DNA of 64,000 nt from Pristiophorus japonicus (taxonomy: Eukaryota), in contig NC_091984.1 in the NCBI RefSeq assembly GCF_044704955.1, forward strand, positions 145,018,001 to 145,082,000, written 5' to 3'. How positions within the stretch are numbered: position 1 is the stretch's first letter; each line of letters opens with the position of its first letter. A model generated the notes under the pieces. It was not told the origin of the DNA. It worked only from the letters and a program-made list of their open reading frames with translations, and did not search any database. Shown in pieces: positions 19,694 to 52,120 of this stretch. A program made the position numbers and the translations under genes.

Positions 19694-19742
19694 ATGATTT
19701 CACCCATCCAGCTGATCTGGCCTCTGGCATTCTGCATCGCAG
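19694..19742 (+). CDS. IGKV: Ig kappa (type III/NS4) leader exon
   Basis: ACCATG; MISPIQLIWPLAFCIA(G); 49 nt then GT donor at 19743. Confidence 0.93.
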
Positions 19743-19929
19743 GTACGAACCTCTCTCCTTCCACGTTTAATATCTCCCTGCTGTCGATTTCTGTCCAACT
19801 CGACTGACCAGTGATTGAAGGGCAAATGCTGACACTAGAGGAGAGTTCAGTGTCTCGAGCAATCTCTCATTTTACAGCGTCTTTCTGTGACAGTGCTTAC
19901 TTCACTTTCTTTCCCCATTTCCCCCTCAG

Positions 19930-20228
19930 GTATCAGTGGGGACATCATCAGGACCCAGTCTCCCCCGGAGCTGTCAGTGAGTGAGGGACAGACTGCAACC
20001 ATCACCTGTACCGCCAGTGCATCTGTTAGCAAGTATGCTGCTTGGTACCAGCAGAAAGCCGGGCAGAAACCCACTCTGCTGATCTATGCAGCAACAAATC
20101 GTTTCACTGGAACCTCCAATCGCTTCACCGGCAGTTACCAGTCCAACACGTTCACCCTGAGCATCAGCAACGTGCAGAGCGAGGATGTCGCAGTCTATTA
20201 CTGTCAGCAACATAACAGCCTCCCTCTA
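19930..20228 (+). CDS. IGKV: Unrearranged Ig kappa V exon, open frame
   Basis: Acceptor CCCCCTCAG; [26 protein letters not shown]...[15 protein letters not shown]...[15 protein letters not shown]. Confidence 0.95.
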
Positions 20229-20256
20229 CACTGTGATACACAGCTGTACAAAAACC
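20229..20256 (+). promoter_or_regulatory. 12-RSS of Vk
   Basis: CACTGTG + 12 bp (ATACACAGCTGT) + perfect ACAAAAACC. Confidence 0.95.
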
Positions 20257-20364
20257 TCAATATACACAGCCCCACCTCCTGTACTGACTCACCCCACAGT
20301 TATATATAATATATAATAATGGACACACAGCCCCACCTCCTGCACTGTGCTGTCGGCCCACAAC

Positions 20365-20885
20365 ACCACCCCTCTCCCACCCCCAACACTGCCCCTCTCC
20401 CACTCTCAACACCCCCCCTCTCCCTCCCCCAACACCGCCCCTCTCCCACCCCCAACAATGCCCCTCTCCCACCCCCAACACCCCCCCTCTCCCGCCCCCA
20501 ACACCCCCCTCTCCTGCCCCCAACACTGCCCCTCTCCTGCCCCCAACACTGCCCCTCTCCCATCCCCAACACCCCCCTCTCCCATCCCCAACACCGCCCC
20601 TCTCCAACCCCCAACACTGCCCCTCTCCCACCCCCAACAACGCCCCTCTCCCTCCCCCAACACCCCCCTCTCCTGCCCCCAACACTGCCCCTCTCCTGCT
20701 CCCAACACCGCCCCTCTCCCATCCCCAACACCGCCCCTCTCCCATCCCCAACACCTCCCCTCTCCCATCCCCAACACCCCCTCTCCCATCCCCAACACTG
20801 CCCCTCTCCCAGCCCCAACACCGCCCCTCTCCCAGCCCCAACACCGCCCCTCTCCCACCCCCAGCACCGCCCCTCTCCCGCCCCA
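20365..20885. repeat. C-rich ~23-bp minisatellite
   Basis: CCCCAACACTGCCCCTCTCC(CA) units. Confidence 0.95.
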
Positions 20886-21069
20886 TTCATTTTTTACAAC
20901 AAAATGGATGAATTTCGATCATTTCTCCGCTCCATCTATTCTGGCGTAAATCCTACATTTTGCTCGAATTATCCACCCCAAACGGTTCAGAGGACAATTT
21001 TCAGCCCATCGTCCTGTATCTGAATCGCTGCCAAGCCATTCAACAATCAAAGCAGAATTAATTTGTTTA

Positions 21070-21670
21070 CACATGTGTTAGTAGAAAGCTGGAATTGTCT
21101 CCCACATAAGGCAATGGATTTTCGGACAATATGGAGATTTCAAGGCGGAGATAGATAGATTTTTGTTGGGTAAGGCTATGCTGACATAGGGAGCAAAGGT
21201 GGGTAAATGGAGTTGAGGTTCAAATCAGCCATGATCTAATTGAATGTTGGAAAATACCCGAGGGGCTGAATGGCCCCCTTCTGATCCTCATGTTCCTATG
21301 TTCCTGTACTAGAGAGTTTTTCCCAAGCGGTGGGCGCAGGCAAAACTGGGGTTGGAAGGCTGGGGGTCAGGGGTCATACAATGAATTGGCCAATGATGAC
21401 GGCCTTGTCAGTGATTGAGAGCGTGGAAGTAGTGAGGCCAGGAGAGAAAGCAAAGTGTAGGGGGTGGCCCATGGTGATGGGTGGGAGTGTTTCAGGGGCA
21501 ACAGGAGGTCAGTGAAATCAGAGGAGACAGGATAAGGGGAGGTGAGATGGAGATTGAGATCAGTGAGGATGAAGAGTTACTGAGTGTCGAGACTGAAGGA
21601 GGAAAGCAGGGAGGATATGGAGGGGAGAAACCTGGGCTGGTCGGCAATAGATGGCCATTTTAAAGGGGCG
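21070..21670. mobile_element. Old CR1 3' end (+) and probable L2 fragment (-)
   Basis: CR1-type 3' UTR ...GGGGCTGAATGGCC...TGTTCCTATGTTCC; following sequence only weakly assignable. Confidence 0.5.
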
Positions 21671-23004
21671 AAGACTGGAAAGCATGTCACAATAGACCGT
21701 TCTGATGTCACAACAAAATGCTCTGATGTCACAAGCACTTCCTCATGACATCATTAAACAGTTTCAATCCTCGACACATGAAAATCCCAATTTGGGGCAA
21801 TGCTGCTGGAAATGTCTGTGGGACACTCCCATTTCTACACCTTTTGCCACAAGTCTGTGGTGTGGAGGGCTGTCTATTCGGAAGAGCCAGCTGCTCAATC
21901 CAGCATGGTTGCCCAGGGGTGTGAATGTTGCCTTGTCCGTATGGTCTGTATCTCAGGTCTGGCCCTTCACCCCCAACACCCACCTTAAACTGACACACAC
22001 AGCGGGCAGGACTTATATGGGCACATGACCACCCCCCGCGGGACACATCACCACTGAGGGGTCATGTCCCCTGGCCTCACAATGGAAACCATGGCAACAC
22101 AGAAACCGCAGGGGTGGACCAATCACAGCAAAGTGGTACAGACTGTGTATTTGTGCCTGAGAGAGCAACGAGGAGAGAGCTTCAATCTATTTAACCCTTC
22201 GATCCCTGGCTGCTGTCTGAAAACTAAGCCCGAGTTGGCAGAGGCGGTGACTACATTATTCCCGCTATTATTCTGCGCCCTGCTCATTCATCTCAACCCC
22301 TGTGTTAATGTTTCTCTGATCAATGGTACTGCTCCCCACGGCAAATCCAACCAGAGAGATTTCTCAGCTGTGTGTGAAACATGGAGAAGCAGAGATGGGC
22401 ATGGACTGTGTGGGGGCACTAAAGGACCCACTGGCTCCGACCAATAATAAAACAGTCGGTAAGGACACGGTGAAAAGGGGGGGATGGGACCAGATGATGG
22501 GCCTGGGCAAGTCCGACAAGGAGGCTCTCCTGCCGGGGGGGTGAGAGCTGAGGAACATACCATTATTGTCCTGGTGGGGGGGGTAAGAGGAGGGGGAGAG
22601 GTGAGGAACATGCAGGTGTTGTCCTGGGTGGGGGGGATGGGGGGAGAAGAGCAGGAGAGTTGAGGAACATACAATTTTTGTCCCGGGGGGGTGGGGGAGA
22701 GGAGAGAGAGAGGTGAGGAACATACCATTAGAGAATAGGATTGACTGGCAGGAGTTCAAGCCAGGCAAACCTGACGAAGGTGCATTCATATACAACCGGA
22801 CATTTCACACTGACAGGCTGGGTGGCAGGGAACCCAGGCCCATTGATGTCATCACCATCTAATGTGATTCCTGGGAACAATACCCCGAGAGGTAACTCAG
22901 AGACACTGTCCCTTCACATTATTAAAGCACAGTCACGACTCAGTCCCAACCCAAACTGGTACAAAGCAGGAAATGGCTTTGCCATTGTCTTCCAGGAGTT
23001 AAGC

Positions 23005-23815
23005 CAGCCCTCAGTGCAGCCCCATCGACAGGGCGGCACTCCCTCAGTACTACCCCATCGACAGAGCGGCATCCCCTCAGTACCGCCCCACCGACAGAGC
23101 GGCACTCCCTCAGTGCAGCCCTATCGACAGTGCGGCACTCCCTCAGTAATGCCCCTCCGACAGTGCAGCAATCCCTCAGGACTGCCCCTCCGACAGTGCA
23201 GCACTCCCTCAGAACTGCCCCACTGACAATGCAGCACTCCCTCAGTACTGCCCCTCCGACAGTGCAGCACTCCCTCAGTGCTGTCCCTCCGACAGTGCAG
23301 CACTCCTTCAGTACTGCCCCTCTGACAGTACAGCACTCCCTCAGTACTGCCCATCTGACAGTGTGGCACTCCCTCAGTACTGCTCCTCCGACAGTGCAGC
23401 ACTCCCTCAGTACTGCCCCTCCGACAGTGCAGCAATCCCTCAGGACTGCCCCTCCAACAGTGCAGCACTCCCTCAGTACCGCCCCTCCGACAGTGCAGCA
23501 CTCCCTCAGTACTGCCCCACTCACAGAGCAGCACTCCCTCAGTACTGCCCCTCTGACAGTGTGGCACTCCCTCAGTATTGCTCCTCCGACAGTGCAGCAC
23601 TCCCTCAGGACTGCCCCTGTGACAGTGTGGCACTCCCTCAGTACTGCTCCTCCGACAGAGCAGCACTCCCTCAGTACTGCCCCTGTGACAGTGCAGCACG
23701 CCCTCAGTACTTCCCCTCTGACAGTGTGGCACTCCCTCAGTTCTGCCCCTCCGACAGTGCAGCACGCCCTCAGTACTGCCCCTCTGACAGTGCAGCACTC
23801 CCTCAGGACTGCACA
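23005..23815. repeat. 33-bp tandem repeat derived from the SINE core
   Basis: CAGTGCAGCACTCCCTCAGTACTGCCCCTCCGA about 24 times; same sequence inside SINEs at ~27352-27385 and ~36525-36560. Confidence 0.95.
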
Positions 23816-25448
23816 GTGGTGTATGTCTTTATTTTACACTCAGGTCCCTAGAGTGGGGCTTGAACCCACGATACAACATTGCATCACTGGATGCCGCACA
23901 GTCTGAGCTGTGAGTCATATCCCGACCTCAGTTGGAACAACTAACTCAGAACAAACAACAACAGCAACTTTTATACAGCACCTTTAACACAGTAAAACTC
24001 CCCGAGCGCTTCACAAGAGCGTTATAGAATAAAGATTGACAGCGAGCCACGTAAGGAGACATTGAAAATTGCAGCTCAGTCAAATTGTGAGGGAAATTGG
24101 CAGTGCTGTCTTCATATCAAAAGGGGGCGATGTTGGTTCTGAAAAGGCCAAATTTTTGGACAATTTCTGTGTCACTCAATTGATTGGTTTGTAAAACCCG
24201 TTTGGACCAAATCTCCAGTCAGGTTTGCAGAATCATTTCCAGTTCCCCACGTGTCATTTGATGGTGGATCTCAGCGGCATCTCCTCGTCCACTCGTGAGC
24301 CGGTGTCTCAGACCGATTGGCGGGTCAGCAGCCACTCCACACTGCAGCGAGCATCGGCAGGCTATTCCACTGTGGGAGGCCTCACCGCGGAGCTCGGTGC
24401 ATGGGGTATATCCACACAGAGACGCTCAGCCGCCAGGTACAGCTATAGCAACTGGAACATTAGAGCAACATCCCGAGGCAGCTGACAAGAGGCGTAATCT
24501 GGTCAAAGTGGTGCTGAGCCAAAGGGGGAGGGGCTGTGAGGGGGATCAAAACCCTCAGTCACAGATTGGGTTTGAAGGGAGGTCTTTAAAGAGGAGAGGG
24601 GTGGAGTGGCAGAGAGGTTTAGGGAGCAGGGAGTTAGGGCCCAGGCAGCTGAAGGCACGGCCCCCAATGGAGGGGGAAGGGAAGGGGGGATGGATAAGAA
24701 GCCTGAGCCAGATACAGCGGCCCCTGAACACAACAACAACTTGCATTTATAAAGCGAGTGTTGTGACAATGACAGACAGCGAGAATATAACCCAGATAAT
24801 GTAACACAGTATTTGCAGCACTTGACACTGTGGGGAAAGCTGTCATTTTAAATCCATGAGCTGTACATAAGCGAGAGCAGGACCTGTTTGTGACCGGTGC
24901 GGAGATCACCACTTACAGAAGGTAGTTACTGCAGGGAATTCAGGGCCACAGTGACCTCCTGGACTAGTTTCCATCGCCCGGGGGTGGGTGGGCGTCGGAG
25001 AGGAGTTTCTCAGATTTATTTCCCCCCAATGGGTTTTTTCCCTGGTTTTTCGCCTCTCCCAGGAGATCAGGTAGTTTTGGGTGGGGTGGAGAGTCTATAC
25101 TGTGATACGCAAGGTATCACAATTGTGTGGGTCGGGCTGGATGGACCACAGGGTCTTTACCTGTCCGTCACTGTCCGCAGGTTTGGGTTTCAAAGATGTG
25201 GAGCTGAATTGGAAAGAAAGACTTGCATTTATGTAGCGCCTTTCACCACCTCAGGACGTCCCAAAGCACTTTACAGCCAATGAAGTACTTTTGAAGTGTT
25301 GTCACTGCGGTAATGGAGGAGACACGACAGACAGTTTGTGCACAGCAAGCTCCCACATGTGACTATGACCAGATAATGGGCCCAAATTGCGTATCGCCCC
25401 TATTGGGGCGGTAACTTTTCCCACGCCCATTCCCACCCCGGAAACGAA

Positions 25449-26350
25449 ACGGCTCACGGGGAGCGGACACGGCTCACGGGGTGTGGACACGGCTCACGGT
25501 GTGCGGCCACGGTTCACGGGGCGAGGACACGGCTCACGGGGCGCGGACACGACTCACGGGGTGCGGACACGGTTCACGGGGCGAGGACACGGCTCACGGG
25601 GCGCGGACACGACTCACGGGGTGCGGACACGGGTCACGGGGTGTGGACACGGCTCACGGGCTGCGGCCACGGCTCACGGGCTGCGGCCACGGTTCACGGG
25701 GCGAGGACACGGCTCACGGGGCGCGGACACGACTCACGGGGCGCGGACACGGGTCACGGGGCGCGGTCACGGCTCACGGGTCGTGGACACGACTCCCGGG
25801 GCGAGGACACGGCTCACGGGGCGCGGTCACGGCTCACGGGGCGCGGTCACGGCTCACGGGGCGCGGTCACGGCTCCCGGGGCGCGGTCACGACTCACGGG
25901 GCGCGGTCACGACTCACGGGGCGCGGTCACGGCTCACGGGGCGTGGACACGGCTCACGGGTCGTGGACACGGCTCACGGGGCGAGGACACGACTCCCGGG
26001 GCGTGGACACGGCTCACGGGTCGTGGACACGGCTCACGGGGCGAGGACACGGCTCACGGGGCGAGGACACGGCTCACGGGGCGAGGACACGGCTCACGGG
26101 GCGAGGACACGGCTCACGGGGCGAGGACACGACTCACGGGGCGAGGACACGGCTCACGGGGCGTGGACACGGCTCACGGGGCGAGGACACGACTCACGGG
26201 GCGTGGACACGACTCACGGGGCGAGGACACGACTCACGGGGCGAGGACACGGCTCACGGAGCGTGGACACGACTCACGGGGCGAGGACACGACTCACGGA
26301 GCGAGGACACGGCTCACGGGGCGTGGACACGACTCACGGGGCACGGACAC
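25449..26350. repeat. 20-bp CpG-rich minisatellite
   Basis: GGACACGGCTCACGGGGCG(A/C/T) about 45 times. Confidence 0.97.
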
Positions 26351-26413
26351 AGAAAACAATGTGATAATCTGTTCTTTTGTCATGTTGATTCAGGGATAAA
26401 TATTGGCCGGGAC

Positions 26414-27251
26414 GTATAATGTGGATAATGTGGATAAATGTGAGGTTATCCACTTTGGTGGTAAAAACAGAGAGACAGACTATTATCTGAATGGTGACAG
26501 ATTAGGAAAAGGGAAGGTGCAAAGAGACCTGGGTGTCATGGTACATCAGTCATTGAAGGTTGGCATGCAGGTGCAGCAGGCGGTTAAGAAAGCAAATGGC
26601 ATGTTGGCCTTCATAGCGAGGGGATTTGAGTACAGGGGCAGGGAGGTGTTGCTACAGTTGTACAGGGCCTTGGTGAGGCCACACCTGGAGTATTGTGTAC
26701 AGTTTTGGTCTCCTAACCTGAGGAAGGACATTCTTGCTATTGAGGGAGTGCAGCGAAGGTTCACCAGACTGATTCCCGGGATGGCGGGACTGACCTATCA
26801 AGAAAGACTGGATCAACTGGGCTTGTATTCACTGGAGTTCAGAAGAATGAGAGGGGACCTCATAGAAACATTTAAAATTCTGACGGGGTTAGACAGGTTA
26901 GATGCAGGAAGAATGTTCCCAATGTTGGGGAAGTCCAGAACCAGAGGTCACAGTCTAAGGATAAGGGGTAAGCCATTTAGGACCGAGATGCGGAGGAACT
27001 TCTTCACCCAGAGAGTGGTGAACCTGTGGAATTGTCTACCACAGAAAGTTGTTGAGGCCAATTCACTAAATATATTCAAAAAGGAGTGAGATGAGGTCCT
27101 TACTACTAGGGGGATCAAGGGGTACGGCGAGAAAGCAGGAATGGGGTACTGAAGTTGAATGTTCAGCCATGAACTAATTGAATGGCGGTGCAGGCTAGAA
27201 GGGCCGAATGGCCTACTCCTGCACCTATTTTCTATGTTTCTATGTTTCTAT
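26414..27251 (+). mobile_element. 5'-truncated young CR1 (same subfamily as 9747-14278)
   Basis: Near-identical RT C-terminus and (TTTCTATG)n tail; GGGAC TSD. Confidence 0.95.
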
Positions 27252-27599
27252 GGGACACCCGGGAGAATGCCCCTGTTCTCCTTCAAAATAGTGGCATGGG
27301 ATCATTAACATCCGCCTGAGAGAGCAGAAAAGCCTCTTGCCTGAAAGACATCCCCTCCGACAGTGCGGCACGACCTCAGTACTGCACTGGGACTGTCAGT
27401 CTAGATTTCTGAGCTTAGTATCTGGAGTGTGACCCACAACCTTCGGACTCAGAGACGAGTGTGATGCCCATTGAGCCACAGCTGACTGAGTTGAAAACTT
27501 AAGGCCCATTAATGGCCCATCGATGGTGTTCGCCCTCAGTGGCGTGAACAAATCCAGAAATTATGGCCTGAATGATGTAGGTCAGGCCATTATTTGCTT

Positions 27600-30500
27600 T
27601 TTTTAAATTGTAATTTATTTCTGCTAAGTTAGTTCTCAGTCTATTAAATAGAGGCATGGCAGGGCAGTTCTGTCCCATGGAGTGCACATCCTATGCCATG
27701 TGGGAAGTCCTGGACACTTCTCGTACCCTGGACAATCACATGTGCAGGAACTGTCACCAGTTACAGCAACTCGAGCTCTGCGTTTCAGAGATTGAGCGGC
27801 GGCTGGAGTGCAGCCGTGAGCTGAGAACTTCGTGGATAGCACGTTTCTAGAGGTGGCCACCCCGCAGCTTAAGGGTGTGCAGGCAGAGAGGGAATGGGTG
27901 ACCACCAGACAGAAGAGGAGGTCCAGGCAGGTAGTGCAGGAGTCCCCCGAGTCCATCTCGCTATCCAACCAGTATTGTGTTCTGAGTACTGGTGGGGGCG
28001 ATGGTGCCTCTCGGAAGTGCAGCCAGAGCCAAGTCCATGGTACCACGGGTGGCTCAGCTGCACAGCAGGGAGGAAGAAGAGTGGAAGAGCAATAGTGTTA
28101 GGGGATTCGATAGTTAGGGGAACAGACAGGCATTTCTGCGGCCGCAGACGTGACTCCAGGATGGTATGTTGCCTGCCTGGTGCCTGGGTCAAGGATGTCA
28201 CTGAGTGGCTGCAGTACATTCTGAGCAGGGAGGGTGAACAGCCAGAGGTTGTGGTCCATATCGATACAAATAACATTGGTAGAAAGAGGGATAAGGTCCT
28301 ACAGGCAGAGTTTAGGGAGCTAGGAGAGAGATTAAACAGTAAGACCTCAAAGGTAGTAATCTCCGGATTACTCCCGGTGCCACGTGCTAGTGAGTACAGA
28401 AATAGGAGGATAGAGCAGATGAATGCGTGGCTGGAGAGATGGTGCAGGAGGGAGAGCTTTAGTTTCCTGAGGCATTGGGACCGTTTCTGAGGGAGGTGGG
28501 ACCTGTACAAGCCGGACGGGTTACACCTCAACAGAGCCGGGACCAATATCCTCGCGGGGGGAGTTTGCTAGTGTTGTTGGGAGGGTTTAAACTAGCTTGG
28601 TAGGGGGATGGGAACCGGAGAATGGATTCAGTGGGGAGAGAAGCAAAGCTGGAATTGGAAAGCAGAAAAGTAGAAAGTGAATTTAGAATATAGAGGAAAC
28701 AAAGCCTAGAAAATAGACAACAAGGCAGTTTGACAGTGCTAAATGGTATATACTTCAATGCAAGGAGTATAGGGAATAAGGCAGATGAGCTGAGAGCACA
28801 GATAGACACTTGGGAGTCCGATATTTTAGCTATTACTGAGACATGGCTGAAAGAAGGGCAGGTATGGCAGCTCAACATTCCTGGTTACAGGGTTTTCAGA
28901 CGGGATAGAGAGGGGGTAAAAAAGGAGAGGGTGCTGAATCAATTGAAAGAAACAATTACAGCTGTGAGGAGGGATGATATATCGGAAGGATCATCAAATG
29001 AGGCCATATAGGTCGAATTGAAGAACGGAACAGGGGTAATCACACTGCTGGGAGTGTACTATAGACCCCCAAACAGTCAGAGGGAGAGAGAAGAGCAAAT
29101 ATGCAGGCACATTTCTGATAAGTGCAAAAACTATAGGGCAGTAATAGTAGGGGATTTCAACTATCCTAATATTAACTGGGATAAAATTAGTGTGAAAAGT
29201 ATAGACGGCACGGAATTCCTAAAATTAATTCAGCAGAACTTTTTTAGCCAGTATGTAACAAGCCCAACAAGGGAGGGGACGGTTCTGGACTTGGTTTTGG
29301 GGAATGTGGAGGGGCAGGTGGAAGGGGTATCAGTGGGAGAGCATTTTGGTGCCAGTGATCACAATTCAGTTAGATTTAGGGTAGTTATGGAAAAGGACAA
29401 AGATAGACCAGGAATAAAGGTTCTCAATTGGGGAAAAGCCAATTTTGCTGAGCTGAGATGAGATTTGGCCAAAGTGGACTGGAAATGGCTACTTGAAGGT
29501 AAATCAGTGTCAGAGCAGTGGGAGGCATTCAAGGAGGAAATCCTGTGGTTTCAGAGTAAGTCTGTTCCCTTAAAGGAAAATGTGGGGCTAACAAATCTAG
29601 AGGCCCCTGGATGTCAAGAGAAATACAGTGTAGGATAAAGTAAAAAAGGGAGGCTTATGACAGATACCGAGGGCTCAATACTGCAGGAACTTTAGAGGAG
29701 TATAGAAAGTGCAGGGGTGCAATTAAAAAGGAAATTAGGAAAGCAAAGAGAGAGCATGAAAACATTTTGGCAAGTAAAATCAAGGAAAACCCAAAGATGT
29801 TTTATAAATACATTAAGAGCAAGAGAATAATTAAAGAAAGAGTAGGGCCTAATTGTCGGCGTAGGTGTGATGCAGACATTGCAATCAGGGAGGAGGAGTG
29901 TGAAATATTAGATGAAATTAACATAGTGAGAGAGGAAGTATTAAGGGGCTCAGCAGCTTTGAAGTTGGATAAATCCCCCAGTCCGAATTAAATGTATCCC
30001 AAGCTGTTAAGAGGATCAAAAGAGGAAATAGCAGAGGCTCTGACCAAAACTTTCCAATCCTCTTTGGCGACAGGTGTGGTGCCGGAGGACTGCTAATGTG
30101 GTACCTTTGTTTAAATAGGGAGAAAGGGATAGACCGAGTAATTATAGAGCAGTCAGCCTAACTTCATGGTGGGAAAATTATTGGAAGAAATTCTGAGAGA
30201 CAGGTTAAAACTTCATTTAGAAAGACTCGGATTAATCAAGGAGTCAGCATGGATTTGTTAAGGGAAGATCGTCTCTGACTAACTTAATTGAATTAATCGA
30301 GGCAGTAATAAGGAAGGTCGAAGAGGGCAGTGCGTATGATGTAGTGTACATGGATTTTATCAAGACTTTTGAAAAGGTCCCAAATGGTAGACTGGTCACG
30401 AAAGTAAAAGCCCATGCGATCCAGGGCAAAGTTGCAAGTTGGATCCAAAATTAGCTCAGAGGCAGGAAGCAAAGGGTAATGGTTGATGGGTGTTTTTGTG

Positions 30501-30870
30501 ACTGGAAGGCTGTTTCCAGTGGGGTTCCACAGGGCTCAGTACAAGGTCCCTTGCTTTTTGTGGTATTTATCACTGATTTAGACTTAAATGTCGGGGTATG
30601 ATGTAGAAGTTTGTAGATGATACTAAAATCGGCCGAGTGGCTGATAATGAAGAAGAAAGCTGCAGACTGCAGGAAGATATCAATGAAATGGTCAGGTGGG
30701 CAGAACAGTGGCATATCGAATTTAATCCAGAGATGTGTGAGGTAATGCATTTGGGGAGGTCAAACAAGGCAAGGGAATACACATTGAATGGCGGGACACT
30801 GAGAGGTGTAGAGGAACAAAGGGACCTTGGTTTGCATGTCCACAGATCCCTGAAGGTAGCAGGCCAGGTA
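27600..30870 (+). mobile_element. Degenerate near-full-length CR1 (second subfamily)
   Basis: ORF1 esterase (VLGDSIVRG, VVVHIDTN) and APE/RT remnants with many stops. Confidence 0.9.
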
Positions 30871-31306
30871 GATGGGTTTTTACGACAATCCGGCAGTTTC
30901 CTGGTCACCATTACTGACACTAATTTTTTATTCCAGATTTATTTAATTAACTGAATTTAAATTGCCAGTTGCCGTGGTGGGATTTGAACTCGTGTCTCTG
31001 GATCATTAGTCCAGGCCATAGTAGTCCATAGCTCTTTCAAAGAGCCAGCACAGGTTTGATGGGCCGAATGGCTTCCCTCTGTGCTGTGAGATGCTGTGAT
31101 TAAGAAGCGGGGCTCCAGCTAGCGTAGGCAATGTGGGTTCAAGGGTTGAAAGCAGGGGTTTGGGTGGAGCCCATATCGATGTACCACAAGGGGGCGCTAC
31201 AGCATCGATTGATCCAATTATTGGCAGCGGGGAAACCGGGGACGGAAATAGCTTCAATAAAATGTATGCTGTGACTTTTAAAGTGGTCAACACCACCAGC
31301 ACGATC

Positions 31307-32094
31307 ATAGAATCATAGGAAATTACAGCACGGAAGGAGGGCATTTCAGCCCATCGTGTCAGCACCGGCCAACAAAGAGCTACCCAGCCTAATCCCACTT
31401 TCCAGCTCTGGGTCTGTAGCCCTGTGGGTTATGGCACTTTAAGGGCACATCCAAGTACTTTTTAAATGTCGTGAGTGTTTCTGTCTCTACCACCCTTTCA
31501 GGCAGTGAGTTCCAGACCCCCACCACCCTCTGGGTGAAGAATTGTTTCCTCATCTCCCCTCTAAACCTTCCACCAATTACTTTAAATCTATGCCCCCTGG
31601 TTGTTGACCCCTCTGCTAAGGGAAATGGGTCCATTCTATCCACTCTATCCAGGTTCCTCATCATTTTATGCACCTCAATAAGGTCTCCCCTCAGCCTCCT
31701 CTGTTCCAAGGAAAACACCCCGAGCAGATCCAATCTTTCCTCATAGTTAAAATTCTCCAGTCCTGGCAACATCCTCGTGAATCTCCTCTGTACCCTCTCT
31801 AGTGCAATCACATCTTTCCTGTAATGTGGTGACCAGAACTGTATGCAGTACTCTAGCTGTGGCCTGACGAGTGTTTCATACAGTTCAAGCATAACCTCCC
31901 TGCTCTTATATTCTATACCTCGGCTAATAAAGGCAAGTATTCTGTATGCCTTTTTAACCGCCTTATCGACCTGGCCTGCTACCTTCAGGGATCTGTGGAC
32001 ATGCACTCCAAGGTCCCTCCGTTCCTCCACCCCTCTCAGTACCCTCCCATTTATTGTGTATTCCCTTGCCTTGTTGTCCCTCCCCAAATGCATT
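31307..32094 (-). mobile_element. CR1 3' portion, antisense
   Basis: RT C-terminal ORF 31389-32192 (ERRDLGVHVH, RPQLEYC, TRGHRFK). Confidence 0.9.
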
Positions 32095-32279
32095 AGAACA
32101 AGGCTGCAGTTAGAGCAGCCTTTCCACCCACTGACAGCACTCACTGAGTCTGACTCATGGCATCGATCAGCTGGACATTGATCTGGAAACACCAGCCCCC
32201 TGGTGAGGGAATCAAGGCTCTGATGCGACTGATAAAAGTCAAGATGAGGTTGTGGAGAGGTACACAGCTGCTGCTGGAC

Positions 32280-33810
32280 ACAATGAACAGGAGGAGGCCA
32301 TTCAGCCCCTTGAGCCTATTCCCCCATTCAATCAGATCACGGCTCATCTGTATCTGAACTCCATCTACCCGCCTTGGTTCCACAAGTTCCAAGACCTATA
32401 CTCTCTAGAGTTTAGAAGAATGAGAGGGGATCTTATTGAAACATACACAATTCTGACAGGGCTTTACAGGGTAGATGCAGGGAGGATGTTTCCTCTGGCT
32501 GGGGAGTCTGGAACCAGGTGTCACAGTCTCACAATAAGAGGTCGGCTATTTAGGTCTGAGATGAGGAGAAACCTCTTCACTCAGAGGGTGGTGAATCTCT
32601 GGAATTCTCTACCCCAGAGGGCTGTGGATGCTCAGTCTTTGAGTATATTCAAGACAGAGATTGATAGATTTTTGAATATTAAGGGAATCAAGGGATATGG
32701 GGACAGTGCAGGAAAGTGCAGAAGATCAGCCATGATCTCACTGAAGCGCAGAGCAGACTCGAGGGGCCGAATGGCCTACTCGTGCTCGGGAGGGGTGGAG
32801 GGGATGAGATGGGGGAGGAGGATCGTGTGTGATAGGGGTGCAGGAAGGTGGGGAGGGAGGGTGAGGGATGGAGTGTGAGGATGTCGGGAGTGAGGGAGGG
32901 GAGGGAGGGAGGCGGGAGCAGCTCGGGTGGCGGGGGGGAGGGTAGAGACCAACATGAGATTCCGGTTAAGCAATGCCTCGAGTTTTAAGGTTCTTATCCT
33001 TGTTTTCAAATCCCTTCATGGCCTCACCCTTCCCCATCTCTGTCATCTCCTCCAGCCCCACAACCCCCAGAGATGTCTGCGCTCCTCCAATTCTGCCCTC
33101 CTGAGCATCCCTGATTATAATCGCTCAACCATTGGTGGCCGTGCCTTCTGTTGCCGAGACCCCAAGCTCTGGAACTCCCTACTTAAACCTCGCCGCCTCT
33201 CTGCCTCTCTTTCCTTGTTCAAGACTCCGTAAAACTCCGTAAGATGCTCTTTGGTCACTTACACTAATTTCTTCTGATGTAACTCGGTGTCAAATTTTGT
33301 ATCTCATAATACTCCTGGGAAGTGCCTTGGGACGTTTCACTACGTTAAAAGCGCTATATAAATACAGGTTGTTGTCGTTGAATTGAGGCTGGTTCTCGTA
33401 TTGGACTGTTCAGTCACCTTACGACTCATATTAAGATTGGAAGCAAGTCTTCCTCGATTCCGAGGGACTGCCTATGATGGTGGCTGGGAAAGCACATTGT
33501 GAGGAGGACACTAAAAATCTGCAAAGGGATATAGACAGACTCAGTGAGTAGGCAAAACGTTGGCAGATGGAGTATAATGTGGAAAAATGTGAGGTTATCC
33601 ATTTGGCAGAAAGAATAGGAAAGCAATATATTTTTTAAAAGTACCTGCTGCAGTACAGAGGGACCTGGGTGTCCTGGTGCATGAAACACAAAAAGTTAGT
33701 ATGCAGGTACAGCAAGTGATCAGGAAAGCCAATGGAATGTTGTCCTTTATTGTAAGGGGGATGGAGTATAAAAGCAGAGAAGTCCTGCTACATCTGTACA
33801 GGGTATTGGT
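32280..33810. mobile_element. Patchwork of CR1 fragments and an L2 3' end (32960-33380, +)
   Basis: RRMRGDLIETY; L2-type FKVLILVFKSLHGL...LWNSL and tail GCGCTATATAAATACAGGTTGTTG. Confidence 0.75.
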
Positions 33811-33989
33811 GAGACTCCCTGAGAACACCCCCAGATCACCCTGATTCCCACCGTTCCACACAAGGTCAGCCCCTGATCATCCGCCCTGGTCACCCCTCCA
33901 CTCCCCTCCTCCCCCACATTCCCCTAAAGACCTCCGACATCCCCAGGAGCTGGAGCATCACCGCGGAGCACTCCTCAGGCCGACATAAC

Positions 33990-34003
33990 AGTGCTGGGTA
34001 ACA

Positions 34004-34037
<34 letters not shown>

Positions 34038-34615
34038 CAGAGGGTGCTGGGTAACATTCACACACACACACACACACACACACCTACAGAGGGTGCTGGG
34101 TAACAGTCACTAACACACACACACACCTACAGAGGGTGCTGGGTAACACTCACACACACACACACACACCTACAGAGGGTGCTGAGTAACAGTCACTAAC
34201 ACACACACACACACACCTACAGAGGGTGCTGGGTAACACTCACACACGCACACACACACACACACACACCTACAGAGGGTGCTGAGTAACAGTCACTAAC
34301 ACACACACACACACACCTACAGAGGGTGCTGGGTAACACTCACACACACACACCTACAGAGGGTGCTGGGTAACACTCACACACACACACCTACAGAGGG
34401 TGCTGGGTAACAGTCACTAACACACACACACACACACCTACAGAGGGTGCTGGGTAACAGTCACTAACACACACATACACACACCTACAGAGGGTGCTGG
34501 GTAACAGTCACACACACACCTACACACACACACCGATAGAGGGTGCTGGGTAACAGTCACACCACACACACACACACACACACACCTACAGGTGGTGCTG
34601 GGTAAGCCACACTAA
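33990..34615. repeat. Minisatellite with embedded variable (CA)n
   Basis: CCTACAGAGGGTGCTGGGTAACA(G/C)TCAC(TA)(AC)n about 14 times. Confidence 0.95.
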
Positions 34616-34786
34616 CACTCAGGGACATGTACACAATGATACACTGACTGCTCCTCTTCCTAAGCTGAGGCCTCACTCGGTACAGTTTTGTGCTGCTGCC
34701 ACGAGCCACATGTTAAGGAGAGAGAATGCAACGTTGTGACTGGGGCCTCCTGCCCCCAGATTGCCCCCAGCAGTCAGCACAGAGTG

Positions 34787-34825
34787 CACAGTGCGATCCC
34801 ACCATCGGGAGCTGCCCCAAAAACC
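34787..34825 (+). promoter_or_regulatory. Orphan 23-RSS downstream of Ck (KDE/RS-like)
   Basis: CACAGTG (34787-34793) + exactly 23 bp + CCAAAAACC (34817-34825, 8/9). Confidence 0.8.
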
Positions 34826-35196
34826 CCAGTGTGCTGAGTGAGAGTCAATGCTCAGACTGGGAGGGTTTAATCCCAGCGTCTCTGTGTTTAATCTTGTGCA
34901 CTCCAGGGGTTCGAGGTCAAATTTATCGTTTTAAAATGATTGATAATTGACTTTAAATCAAATCTCCTGCTGACGTGCCATTGATTGACAGCCCACCCAG
35001 CCAATCAGGACAGACACTTACTGAAATGCAGTCAATCCAGCTGAGGGGGAGGTGGGACATTTCCAAAGCACTCGCCAGACACAGACTGAATATTTTTCAT
35101 GTTTATTGCCTTTTACAGATTCACATTTACAGAAACAAGATTTGAATAAACAGCCCAGCGAGAGCAAGCTGGAGACATTCACAGGGAGAATGCAGC

Positions 35197-35202
35197 TTTA
35201 TT
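35197..35202 (-). terminator. Ck polyadenylation signal AATAAA (second candidate at 35102-35107)
   Basis: TTTATT on + about 430 bp past the Ck stop. Confidence 0.6.
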
Positions 35203-35632
35203 AAAACAGTTGTGGGGATTCTCTCCACACCGTGAGAATCCTGTCCCTTTAAACGGGGACAAAACCTTGCATTGTAACAGCAGGGTGAGCAGGGAGGGGG
35301 TCTGCTTACTGAAGCGGCACTTCGCAGTTTAACATTAGTTTTACTCTGCAGACAGTCTTCAGCATCTTCGAGAGGTATTACTTGGCAGCACGAGTCAACA
35401 CTGTCCCATCAAACCCTCCCCGGGCAGGTACAGCACGGGTTAGATACCGAGTAAAGATCCCTCTACACTGTCCCAATAACTTGCCTTACCCCCTGACCCT
35501 CAGATGCTTTCCCTGACCCAGTCCCGAGAAGGAAGAGAGTAGAAATGCAGTGCTGACAATGACCTTTGCCCTCCCGGCTCACCCCCTGTTCTATTTAAAG
35601 TTGCGTCTCCCCCGCGGACTGTCCTTGACACA

Positions 35633-35961
35633 CTACGCACATTCTGCTCTCCTGATGCCCTTGCTGAGGGGAGAGGAGAGGCTCTCGTGGGTGAGGCTGC
35701 AGGAGAAGCTGGCGTTGGACTCCCAGTCGTAGCCAGAGAGGGTCAGCAGGCTGCTGACACTGTAGGTGTTGTCCGAAGCTCGCAGGTAGTCGCTGGTCTG
35801 GACCCCGGTCGAAATGGTCGCCCCGTTCTTCATCCACTCCACCTCCACCGCATCGGGGTAGAAGTGATCGGCGAGGCACACCAGAGTGGCAGTGCCCTTG
35901 GTCGTGACCTCCTCCAGGGAGGGGGGCAGCAGGGTCAGCGTGGGTGGTGTCTTCCCTCGGC
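35633..35961 (-). CDS. IGKC: Ig kappa (type III/NS4) constant exon, intact
   Basis: Acceptor CCCTTTCAG; 329 nt, phase 1; RGKTPPTLTLLPPSLEEVTTKGTATLVCLADHFYPDAVEVEWMKNG...SDNTYSVSSLLTLSGYDWESNASFSCSLTHESLSSPLSKGIRRAECA*. Confidence 0.95.
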
Positions 35962-36001: not shown

Positions 36002-36029
36002 TGTGTGTGTGTGTGTGTGTGTCACTGTG
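36002..36029 (-). promoter_or_regulatory. Intronic isolated heptamer / cryptic 12-RSS facing Ck
   Basis: On -: CACAGTG + 12 bp (AC)6 + ACACACACA (6/9 nonamer), about 60 bp 5' of the Ck exon. Confidence 0.5.
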
Positions 36030-51258: not shown

Positions 51259-51598
51259 CCACTCAGTTGTACAAACCGCTATTAAAAAAAGGAACAGCGG
51301 TTCTTCTCAAGGGCAATTAGGGATGGGCAATAAATGCTGGCCTTGCCAGTGACATCCACATCCCAGAAACAAATAAAACAAATAAACGGGACAGTGGCAG
51401 CATGGATACGAAATTGGCCAAGTGACAGGAAACGGAGAGTAGTGGTGAACGGTTGTTTTTCGGACTGAAGAAGCTATACAGAGGTGTTCCCCAGGGGTGG
51501 TAATGGGACCACTGCTTTTCTTGGTGTATATTAATGACTCGGATGTGAGTACACAGGGTGCAATTTCAAAATTTGCAGATGACACAAAACTTGGAAGT

Positions 51599-52120
51599 AC
51601 AGGTTGTACCTCCCTTATCCAGAAATCCCTTATCCGGTACCATCCCTCGCCAGACCCATTCCCGTCCATTCCAACATGAACAAATTGAAGAAATTTAAGT
51701 CCTTCCTTGCTGCCGAGTCTCACAATCACTGGCCTGACCCCGTGATCCACCGTAACCCCCCCCCGCCCCCATGATCTTTCTGCCGCACTCCCAGCCCCAA
51801 GCCAGCCAGCCCCGATATCCCCTTGCTCAGTACCTGCACCATCCAATTTAACGTGACCAACCCTCGTCCAGAAAAATCCCTTATCCAGCGATTGCGAGAC
51901 TCGGCAGCAAGGAAGGACTTCAATTTCTTCAATTTGTTCATGTCGGATTGGACGGGAATGGCTCTAGCGAGGGGTGGTTCCAGATAAGGGATTTCTGGAT
52001 AAGGGAGATACAACCTGTACTTCCAAGTTTTGTGTCATCTGCAAATTTTGAAATTGCACCCTGTGTACTCACATCCGAGTCAGGTCGCGAGAGTTCTGGA
52101 TAACGGAGGTTCAACCTGTA
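51599..52120. mobile_element. Tc1/mariner (Tigger-like) MITE in CR1, with an internal fold-back
   Basis: TA-CAGGTTGTACCTCCCTTATCCAGAA ... TTCTGGATAACGGAGGTTCAACCTG-TA. Confidence 0.7.

What the first reader, a model, noticed from the sequence alone, without database searches (positions are those of the whole stretch)
34787..34825. Orphan 23-RSS just 3' of shark Ck: candidate kappa-deleting element (RS/KDE analogue)
Seen: a perfect heptamer CACAGTG, a spacer of exactly 23 bp and an 8/9 nonamer, about 810 bp past the Ck stop in non-repetitive DNA. On the Ck coding strand it reads nonamer-23-heptamer, the Jk orientation, with no functional J or downstream C attached. Established: mouse RS and human KDE are J-less 23-RSSs downstream of Ck that recombine with Vk 12-RSSs or an intronic heptamer to destroy the locus (receptor editing, isotype exclusion), and shark V-J-C clusters are generally described as lacking such secondary rearrangement. 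Inference: this locus may carry a RAG-dependent inactivation switch, implying an ancient or convergent editing system in cartilaginous fish.
Basis: partly seen in the sequence, partly recalled or inferred. Interest (0 to 1): 0.92.

Follow-up and report, generated by a model that had tools for sequence, protein, structure and literature searches.

The report
Dead-J recombination signal behind shark Cκ
A near-perfect antibody-gene recombination signal, attached to a decayed J-like segment, sits about 0.8 kb behind an intact shark kappa light-chain constant exon; by its sequence the RAG recombinase should be able to cut it, but nothing here shows that the shark uses it to switch the gene off.

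Summary
On the + strand, CACAGTG (34787-34793), a 23-nt spacer and CCAAAAACC (34817-34825) lie 807 nt past the stop of an intact kappa-type C exon (35961-35633, minus strand), in J orientation on that strand. A motif of this quality is expected 0.0025 times per 64-kb window, so it is not chance.

It is not bare. Its coding flank is a dead J-like segment reading WGQEAPVTT, with an 11-nt tandem duplication, no GxG, no splice donor and no C behind it.

The window holds no functional J. Its only V (19694-20228, + strand, canonical 12-RSS) is inverted relative to C, so V-to-signal joining would invert 14.5 kb and would not delete C. Deleting C would need the weak heptamer plus CA-repeat site at 36029-36002.

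Public contigs show that RNA-like runs end near 35107. Close copies cross the J/heptamer border in the same organism. A second species keeps the 3'UTR, signal and J relic on one contig with no indel in the signal.

The scan's first readers noted look-alike signals behind C-kappa in four other clusters of this chromosome (unchecked).

My verdict is a real RSS of J descent, most likely a fossil (0.55). A kappa-deleting-element-like function is possible (about 0.2) but untested.

The parts
34787..34825 (-). 23-RSS. On the + strand it reads heptamer CACAGTG (34787-34793), 23-nt spacer, nonamer CCAAAAACC (34817-34825). On the C-kappa strand it reads nonamer-23-heptamer (J orientation).
   Evidence: chance expectation 0.0025 per window
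34732..34786 (-). Dead J-like segment abutting the heptamer. One frame reads ..I-W-G-Q-E-A-P-V-T-T. There is no GxG, a TGA lies upstream in that frame, and there is no consensus splice donor.
   Evidence: the motif [WF]G....[VL]T occurs only here, plus once with an internal stop, across all six frames of the window
34749..34770 (-). 11-nt tandem duplication (CTGGGGGCAAT / CTGGGGGCAGG) inside the J-like relic. Organism B carries a 21-nt insertion at 34765.
35633..35961 (-). Intact kappa-type light-chain C exon (C1-set), including the TAG stop.
35102..35632 (-). 3'UTR of the C-kappa transcript family. AATAAA lies at 35202-35197 and 35107-35102 (minus strand). RNA-like contigs reach 35107 and not beyond. 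A fragment at 35398-35476 is repeated at very high copy number in every run laid (I take it for a SINE).
36002..36029 (-). Heptamer CACAGTG (36029-36023), 12 nt, then ACACACACA (6 of 9), 41 nt upstream of the C exon. It is a weak 12-RSS-like site facing the 23-RSS and the only deletional partner in the window.
19694..20228 (+). Intact V-kappa gene (leader 19694-19742, V exon 19930-20228), inverted relative to C-kappa.
20229..20256 (+). Canonical 12-RSS of the V gene (CACTGTG-12-ACAAAAACC). It has the same orientation on the + strand as the 23-RSS, so the pair is inversional.
34012..34581 (.). 47-bp CA-rich minisatellite that bounds the J-like relic region on its far side.

Best explanation
This is a genuine recombination signal by descent: the 23-RSS of a decayed J-type gene segment (a pseudo-J) left about 0.8 kb 3' of an intact C-kappa exon. 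It most likely arose when a J-C or V-J-C unit was duplicated and the second unit lost its other parts. It was then copied along with the kappa minicluster family.

By sequence it keeps what RAG needs: a perfect heptamer, the A tract of the nonamer and a 23-nt spacer. I infer that it can be cut when the cluster chromatin is open.

In this window, joining it to the V 12-RSS would invert 14.5 kb and make a sterile V-pseudoJ joint. I take it to be a fossil with no selected function. Any rearrangements at it would be non-productive by-products.

Shown here: the motif, the J-like relic, the geometry, its position beyond the mRNA end, the existence of close copies, and a cross-species counterpart. 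Inferred: the origin by duplication, RAG competence and the lack of selection.
For: - The motif is far better than chance allows.
- A J-like relic abuts the heptamer on the correct side and strand, and its motif is unique in the window.
- The relic is decayed: an 11-nt duplication, the GxG motif lost, no donor, and a 21-nt indel relative to organism B.
- No functional J, second C or second V exists in 64 kb, so the local 'cluster' is itself incomplete.
- RNA-like runs X5 and X6 cover only 35107-35946, so the RSS lies outside the mRNA.
- Organism A contigs 34712-34800 and 34716-34802 cross the relic/heptamer border with 3-4 differences, which means close copies exist.
- An 856-nt contig from organism B spans 34608-35420, and all 36 of its gap letters fall outside the RSS.
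- At about 14% divergence, a neutral 16-nt consensus keeps at most 1 change in roughly two of three cases (my calculation). An intact RSS therefore needs no selection to explain it.
Against: - The RSS matches consensus at 15 of 16 positions with exact spacing, while the adjoining J part is badly decayed. That is the pattern expected if only the signal were under selection.
- A facing heptamer sits 41 nt upstream of the C exon. Two other first-reader notes on this chromosome describe RSS pairs around C-kappa spanning 1253 and 1256 nt, against 1243 nt here (unchecked).
- Summed contig depth peaks over 34694-34787 at about the level of the C exon. The tool itself warns that depth from contigs is unreliable.
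Confidence: 0.55

Rival explanations
1. It is a functional kappa-deleting element analogue. After an out-of-frame or self-reactive VJ join, RAG pairs this 23-RSS with the heptamer in the J-C intron (36029-36023), or with an upstream V 12-RSS in clusters that have one. That excises the C exon and silences the minicluster, which otherwise has no way to rearrange a second time.
For: - The position, orientation and spacer class match RS/KDE, and no functional coding segment is attached.
- A perfect facing heptamer lies in the intron 41 nt from the C exon.
- The signal quality is far above chance.
- The spacing is kept in a second species.
- The scan's first readers noted similar signals in four other kappa clusters of the same chromosome (unchecked).
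- The logic fits: in a one-V, one-J cluster, only an intron-to-3' signal deletion could inactivate a finished VJ.
Against: - No junction has been seen. That result is uninformative, because contigs cannot show rare somatic events.
- The intronic partner has a CA-repeat 'nonamer' (6 of 9, no A tract).
- This particular C has no J or V upstream within 28 kb, and its only V is inverted.
- Recurrence among paralogues follows from common descent alone.
- The difference in preservation between the RSS and the relic is not significant.
- Base-level conservation of the RSS in organism B could not be read from the output.
Confidence: 0.22
2. It is the working or recently working J signal of an unrecognised, teleost-like inversional architecture (J and C on one strand, V inverted). 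Alternatively the local order is an assembly error, and the true unit is not represented correctly in this window.
For: - The V 12-RSS and this 23-RSS form a correct inversional 12/23 pair 14.5 kb apart.
- Teleost light-chain clusters do rearrange by inversion (PMC3014032).
- Another first-reader note reports a V-J unit flanked by two opposed C-kappa genes (unchecked).
Against: - No C exon lies between the relic and the V on the minus strand (tblastn).
- The relic lacks GxG and a splice donor.
- The RSS and C are only 0.8 kb apart with no assembly gap nearby; the only run of N is at 433-692.
- A single organism B contig confirms the 3'UTR-RSS-relic order.
Confidence: 0.08
3. It is the footprint of a germline RAG event or of a transposon end: an RSS-bounded cassette carrying the C exon, or the terminal repeat of a Transib-type element.
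For: - On the C strand the layout is heptamer-12-like ... C exon ... 23-heptamer with the heptamers outermost, which is the form of an excised signal-ended fragment.
- RAG has acted in shark germ cells (PMC2193156).
Against: - There is no target-site duplication: ACACC before the left heptamer against CACTC after the right one.
- The left 'nonamer' is a CA repeat.
- The flank of the 23-RSS is J-like, which means the signal sits in its native context.
- No other copy of the flank exists in the window.
Confidence: 0.05
4. It is a chance cryptic RSS with no relation to immunoglobulin gene history.
For: A genome of several Gb should contain on the order of a hundred motifs of this quality by chance (extrapolated).
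Against: - The expectation is 0.0025 per 64-kb window, and about 1e-5 for the right strand and spacer within 1 kb of a C exon.
- A J-like relic is attached.
- The same layout appears in a second species.
Confidence: 0.02

Closest known systems
Mouse RS / human kappa-deleting element (KDE)
   Same: A 23-RSS lies downstream of C-kappa in J-kappa orientation without a usable coding segment. A facing isolated heptamer is present in the J-C intron.
   Different: - It lies 0.8 kb rather than about 24-25 kb from C-kappa (distance from my own knowledge).
- A recognisable dead J-like segment is attached.
- It belongs to a multi-copy minicluster family rather than one translocon locus.
- No recombination product has been shown, and homology to RS/KDE was not tested.
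- In this window the only V is inverted, so V-to-signal joining would invert DNA rather than delete C.
Pseudo-J segments that keep their RSS (for example mouse J-kappa 3, non-functional through a defective splice donor; from my own knowledge)
   Same: An intact RSS is attached to a J-like segment that cannot produce a functional chain.
   Different: Known pseudo-J segments lie upstream of their C within the J cluster. This one lies downstream of C with no C behind it, and its motif (WGQ...VT) is nearer to heavy-chain J than to this family's J-kappa (FGKGTKLRL).
Teleost light-chain clusters with inverted V segments (zebrafish; PMC3014032)
   Same: The V lies in opposite polarity to the J and C elements, giving an inversional 12/23 pair.
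   Different: Here the J partner is dead and no C lies on the correct side. Cartilaginous-fish clusters are described as having a single polarity.
Cryptic RSSs at CA repeats (from my own knowledge)
   Same: The upstream partner at 36029-36002 is a heptamer followed by a CA repeat.
   Different: The 23-RSS itself is near-consensus and of J descent, not a repeat by-product.

Membership tests
RS/KDE-type deleting element | Heptamer-23-nonamer downstream of C-kappa in J orientation | tested here: met
   The signal is at 34787-34825, 807 nt past the stop, and reads nonamer-23-heptamer on the C strand.
RS/KDE-type deleting element | No functional coding segment attached | tested here: met
   The flank is a dead J-like relic without GxG or a donor, and no C lies downstream.
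RS/KDE-type deleting element | A 12-type partner (V RSS or intronic heptamer) placed so that joining deletes C-kappa | tested here: inconclusive
   The intronic CACAGTG at 36029-36023 has the right orientation, but its nonamer is a CA repeat matching 6 of 9. The only canonical 12-RSS (20229-20256) is inversional.
RS/KDE-type deleting element | Somatic recombination products in B cells (C deleted, signal circles) | not testable with these tools
   The public runs are kept as contigs only. No joint appears at 34786/34787 among the listed joints, and this says nothing about rare events.
RS/KDE-type deleting element | RSS conserved above its flanks in paralogous and orthologous C-kappa flanks | tested here: inconclusive
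   The organism B contig spans the region with no indel in the RSS, but its substitutions beyond 34784 were not listed.
RS/KDE-type deleting element | Sequence homology to mammalian RS/KDE | not tested
Functional J gene segment | [F/W]-G-x-G motif, a splice donor and a C exon downstream | tested here: not met
   The segment reads WGQE and not WGxG, has no consensus donor after ..ACAACG, and no C lies downstream on the minus strand.
RAG/Transib-type transposon end | Paired terminal signals with a 5-bp target-site duplication | tested here: not met
   The flanks are ACACC and CACTC. No other copy exists in the window.

The most novel reading that the evidence does not exclude
Each kappa minicluster of this shark lineage carries its C exon inside an excisable cassette of about 1.25 kb, bounded by RSSs (an intronic 12-type heptamer and a 3' 23-RSS recruited from a dead J). 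RAG uses this cassette to delete C-kappa. That would give cartilaginous fish a KDE-like inactivation or editing switch, either convergent with or ancestral to the mammalian RS/KDE.
Probability: 0.2. Interest if true: 0.9.

Novelty: new variant of a known kind. Interest (0 to 1): 0.55.

Why it matters
Shark light-chain miniclusters, with one V, one J and one C, are described as unable to undergo secondary rearrangement. How a B cell silences a failed or self-reactive cluster is therefore an open question.

A RAG-competent 23-RSS directly behind C-kappa, facing a heptamer in the intron, would provide a physical means of doing that. It also makes the question testable with a single PCR or long-read assay on B-cell DNA.

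If it is only a fossil, it still records that the kappa unit once carried a second J behind C, and that this J resembles a heavy-chain J. It also marks sites where off-target RAG cuts could occur in every cluster.

Tried and rejected
- V-relic reading of the left flank. The organism B insertion creates a TATTAC...CAGCAG string, which suggested the end of a V gene. Local alignment of 34600-34830 against the window's V was no better than shuffles (score 20-21 against a mean of 17; 18-54 of 300 shuffles as good).
- V-relic reading of the flank upstream of the intronic heptamer (AATCGCT, CCAAC, GATGT strings). It was not significant (144 of 500 and 154 of 1000 shuffles as good).
- Signal-joint reading. 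The 7 nt left of the heptamer (CAGAGTG) match an inverted heptamer at 5 of 7, but no nonamer follows at 12 or 23 nt (read).
- Target-site duplication around the RSS pair: none found.
- Search for a real J-kappa. Protein motifs in six frames and a degenerate FGKGTKL DNA pattern found none in 64 kb.
- Homology of 34600-35632 to the rest of the window, including the DNA downstream of V: none.
The protein search gave only three hits: two shark cDNA-like sequences filed under bacterial names and one Scyliorhinus torazame fragment. Scans of metagenome and prokaryote-genome contigs for a C-kappa pattern gave 0 matches.
- The search of earlier findings by sequence and by relatives returned nothing.
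- Literature searches found no report of an RS/KDE-like element in cartilaginous fish.
- The RIC score was not computed, because no model is available.

Full report
**The observation**

The + strand reads CACAGTG at 34787-34793, a 23-nt spacer (CGATCCCACCATCGGGAGCTGCC) and CCAAAAACC at 34817-34825. The nonamer departs from ACAAAAACC only at position 1. From my own knowledge, the positions that matter most for RAG are the CAC of the heptamer and the A tract of the nonamer, and both are intact.

In 400 first-order Markov simulations of the window, a perfect heptamer with a nonamer of at most 1 mismatch at spacing 12 or 23 appeared 0.0025 times per window. With one heptamer mismatch also allowed, the window holds only one other signal of this quality, the 12-RSS of a V gene. 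The motif is therefore real and not chance. I could not compute a RIC score.

**The neighbourhood**

An intact light-chain C exon lies on the minus strand at 35961-35633. It has an AG acceptor, a C1-set domain (E 6e-24), both domain cysteines, a C-terminal ...AECA and a TAG stop.

It is 80-81% identical to two light-chain sequences with YYCQQ...FGKGT(K/E)LRL V-J ends. Those two are filed under bacterial names and look like shark cDNA contamination. It also matches a Scyliorhinus torazame V+C fragment whose leader is nearly identical to the one in this window. Together with the V described below, this supports calling it kappa-type (type III/NS4).

The nonamer end lies 807 nt beyond the stop.

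**What the signal is attached to**

On the minus strand the heptamer is followed by CACTCTGTGCTGACTGCTGGGGGCAATCTGGGGGCAGGAGGCCCCAGTCACAACG. One frame of this reads ..I-W-G-Q-E-A-P-V-T-T-L (34758-34732).

The loose J motif [WF]G....[VL]T occurs only twice in all six frames of the 64 kb. One occurrence is here; the other contains a stop.

The segment is dead:
- The GxG motif is lost (it reads G-Q-E).
- A TGA lies upstream in that frame.
- There is no consensus donor after ACAACG.
- An 11-nt tandem duplication (CTGGGGGCAAT / CTGGGGGCAGG, 34770-34749) shifts the frame.

By my count against degenerate codon consensuses, it matches a heavy-chain J (WGQGTxVTV) at 15 of 21 specified bases. It matches this family's J-kappa (FGKGTKLRL) at 11 of 21. 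The heavy-chain consensus comes from memory, so this is a lead and not a test.

The signal is thus a pseudo-J with its RSS, not a bare RSS.

**No complete cluster is present**

tblastn finds one C and one V in the window. No FGxG-type J exists in any frame, and no match to a degenerate FGKGTKL pattern lies next to an RSS.

The V (leader 19694-19742, V exon 19930-20228) is intact and ends in a canonical 12-RSS, CACTGTG-12-ACAAAAACC, at 20229-20256. It lies on the + strand, convergent with C.

A 23-bp minisatellite (20357-20884) fills the place where its J would be expected.

**Consequences of the geometry**

Both RSSs read heptamer-to-nonamer on the + strand, so they form an inversional 12/23 pair 14.5 kb apart. 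Joining them would fuse V to the dead J and invert 20229-34786. C would stay in place and antisense to V. It would not be deleted.

Deleting C requires a 12-type signal upstream of C on the minus strand. The only candidate is CACAGTG at 36029-36023, followed by 12 nt and ACACACACA (6 of 9, no A tract), 41 nt before the exon. That is a plausible cryptic site but a weak one.

The flanks of this pair show no 5-bp duplication (ACACC against CACTC), so nothing points to transposition.

**Evidence from public runs (contigs only)**

- Runs X5 and X6 are small data sets of unknown kind. They cover only 35107-35946, which is the C exon plus 3'UTR ending at the AATAAA at 35107-35102. I read them as RNA. 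On that reading the family is expressed and the RSS lies about 260 nt beyond the mRNA end.
- Run X1 (organism A, probably DNA) gives short contigs at 34712-34800 and 34716-34802. They cross the relic/heptamer border with 3-4 differences, so close paralogues or alleles keep the junction. At 34743 nearly all other copies carry T, which makes the relic read ...E-A-T-V-T-T.
- Summed depth peaks over 34694-34787 at about the level of the C exon and falls on both sides. The tool warns that depth from contigs should not be used to rank regions, so I treat this as weak evidence.
- Run X8 (organism B, another species) gives one 856-nt contig spanning 34608-35420, with 103 substitutions and 36 gap letters. 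All 36 gap letters are listed and none falls in 34787-34825. One is a 21-nt insertion inside the relic at 34765. The order 3'UTR - RSS - relic and the 23-nt spacing are therefore shared. The substitutions beyond 34784 were cut from the table, so I cannot say whether the heptamer and nonamer bases are conserved.
- No joint or loose end at 34786/34787 was listed. Contigs cannot show rare somatic events.

**Other notes of this scan (AI notes, unchecked)**

First readers of other windows on the same chromosome reported the following:
- A 23-RSS with a dead J-like segment 3' of C: s1-876527 and s1-877714.
- RSS pairs flanking the C exon, spanning 1253 and 1256 nt: s1-874779 and s1-877267. The heptamer-to-heptamer span here is 1243 nt.

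If these hold, the layout belongs to the duplicated unit. That shows age, not function.

**Weighing the readings**

The intact RSS beside a decayed J is the pattern expected if only the signal were selected. The numbers are small, however. At the roughly 14% divergence seen between the two species' copies, a neutral 16-nt consensus keeps at most 1 change in about two of three cases. Having no indel in 39 nt when 2 occurred in about 60 nt is also unremarkable. My combined rough estimate is P about 0.2.

I therefore rank the readings as follows:
- A real RSS of J descent that is a fossil of a duplicated J-C or V-J-C unit, RAG-cleavable by sequence but not shown to be used: 0.55.
- A KDE-like switch that works with the intronic heptamer: 0.22.
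- Part of an unrecognised inversional architecture, or an assembly problem: 0.08.
- The footprint of a germline RAG event or a transposon end: 0.05.
- Chance: 0.02.

**Literature**

The reviews and primary papers I could search describe cartilaginous-fish light-chain genes as miniclusters of a single polarity that rearrange within a cluster by deletion, with up to about 100 loci (PMC3014032, PMC12227049, PMC2193156). I found no report of an RS/KDE-like element in these fish. Many subscription papers are not in the library.

**Limits**

Noticed in passing
window 19694-20256: An intact V-kappa gene (leader, intron, V exon, canonical 12-RSS, and an octamer-like ATTTACAT about 100 nt upstream) lies on the opposite strand to C-kappa, 15.4 kb away, with no J of its own.
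   Followed up: partly
window 20343-20884: A CACTGTG heptamer without a nonamer, followed by a 23-bp C-rich minisatellite (about 23 copies), sits where the V's J segment would be expected. The J may have been destroyed by expansion of the repeat.
   Followed up: no
window 35398-35476: A fragment of about 79 nt inside the C-kappa 3'UTR is repeated at very high copy number in both shark species. Thousands of contigs and summed depths in the millions were laid on it. I take it for a SINE core.
   Followed up: no
window 34960-35010: A TGACGT (CRE-like) motif at 34971 and a CCAAT box at 35001 lie between the poly(A) signal and the RSS. They could be a leftover germline-J promoter or part of a 3' enhancer.
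   Followed up: no
P0001, P0002: Two NCBI proteins filed under Aeromonas veronii and Salmonella enterica are shark kappa light-chain V-J-C fragments, 80-81% identical to this C exon. The bacterial assemblies are probably contaminated.
   Followed up: no
window 23008-23812 and 25449-26350: Two further long minisatellites (33-bp unit, about 24 copies; 20-bp unit, about 45 copies) lie between the V and the C.
   Followed up: no
window 51535-52082: A 198-nt inverted repeat, 94% complementary with a 152-nt loop, sits inside a LINE reverse-transcriptase fragment. Each arm carries a weak RSS-like string (CACAGGG-23-ACACAAAAC).
   Followed up: no
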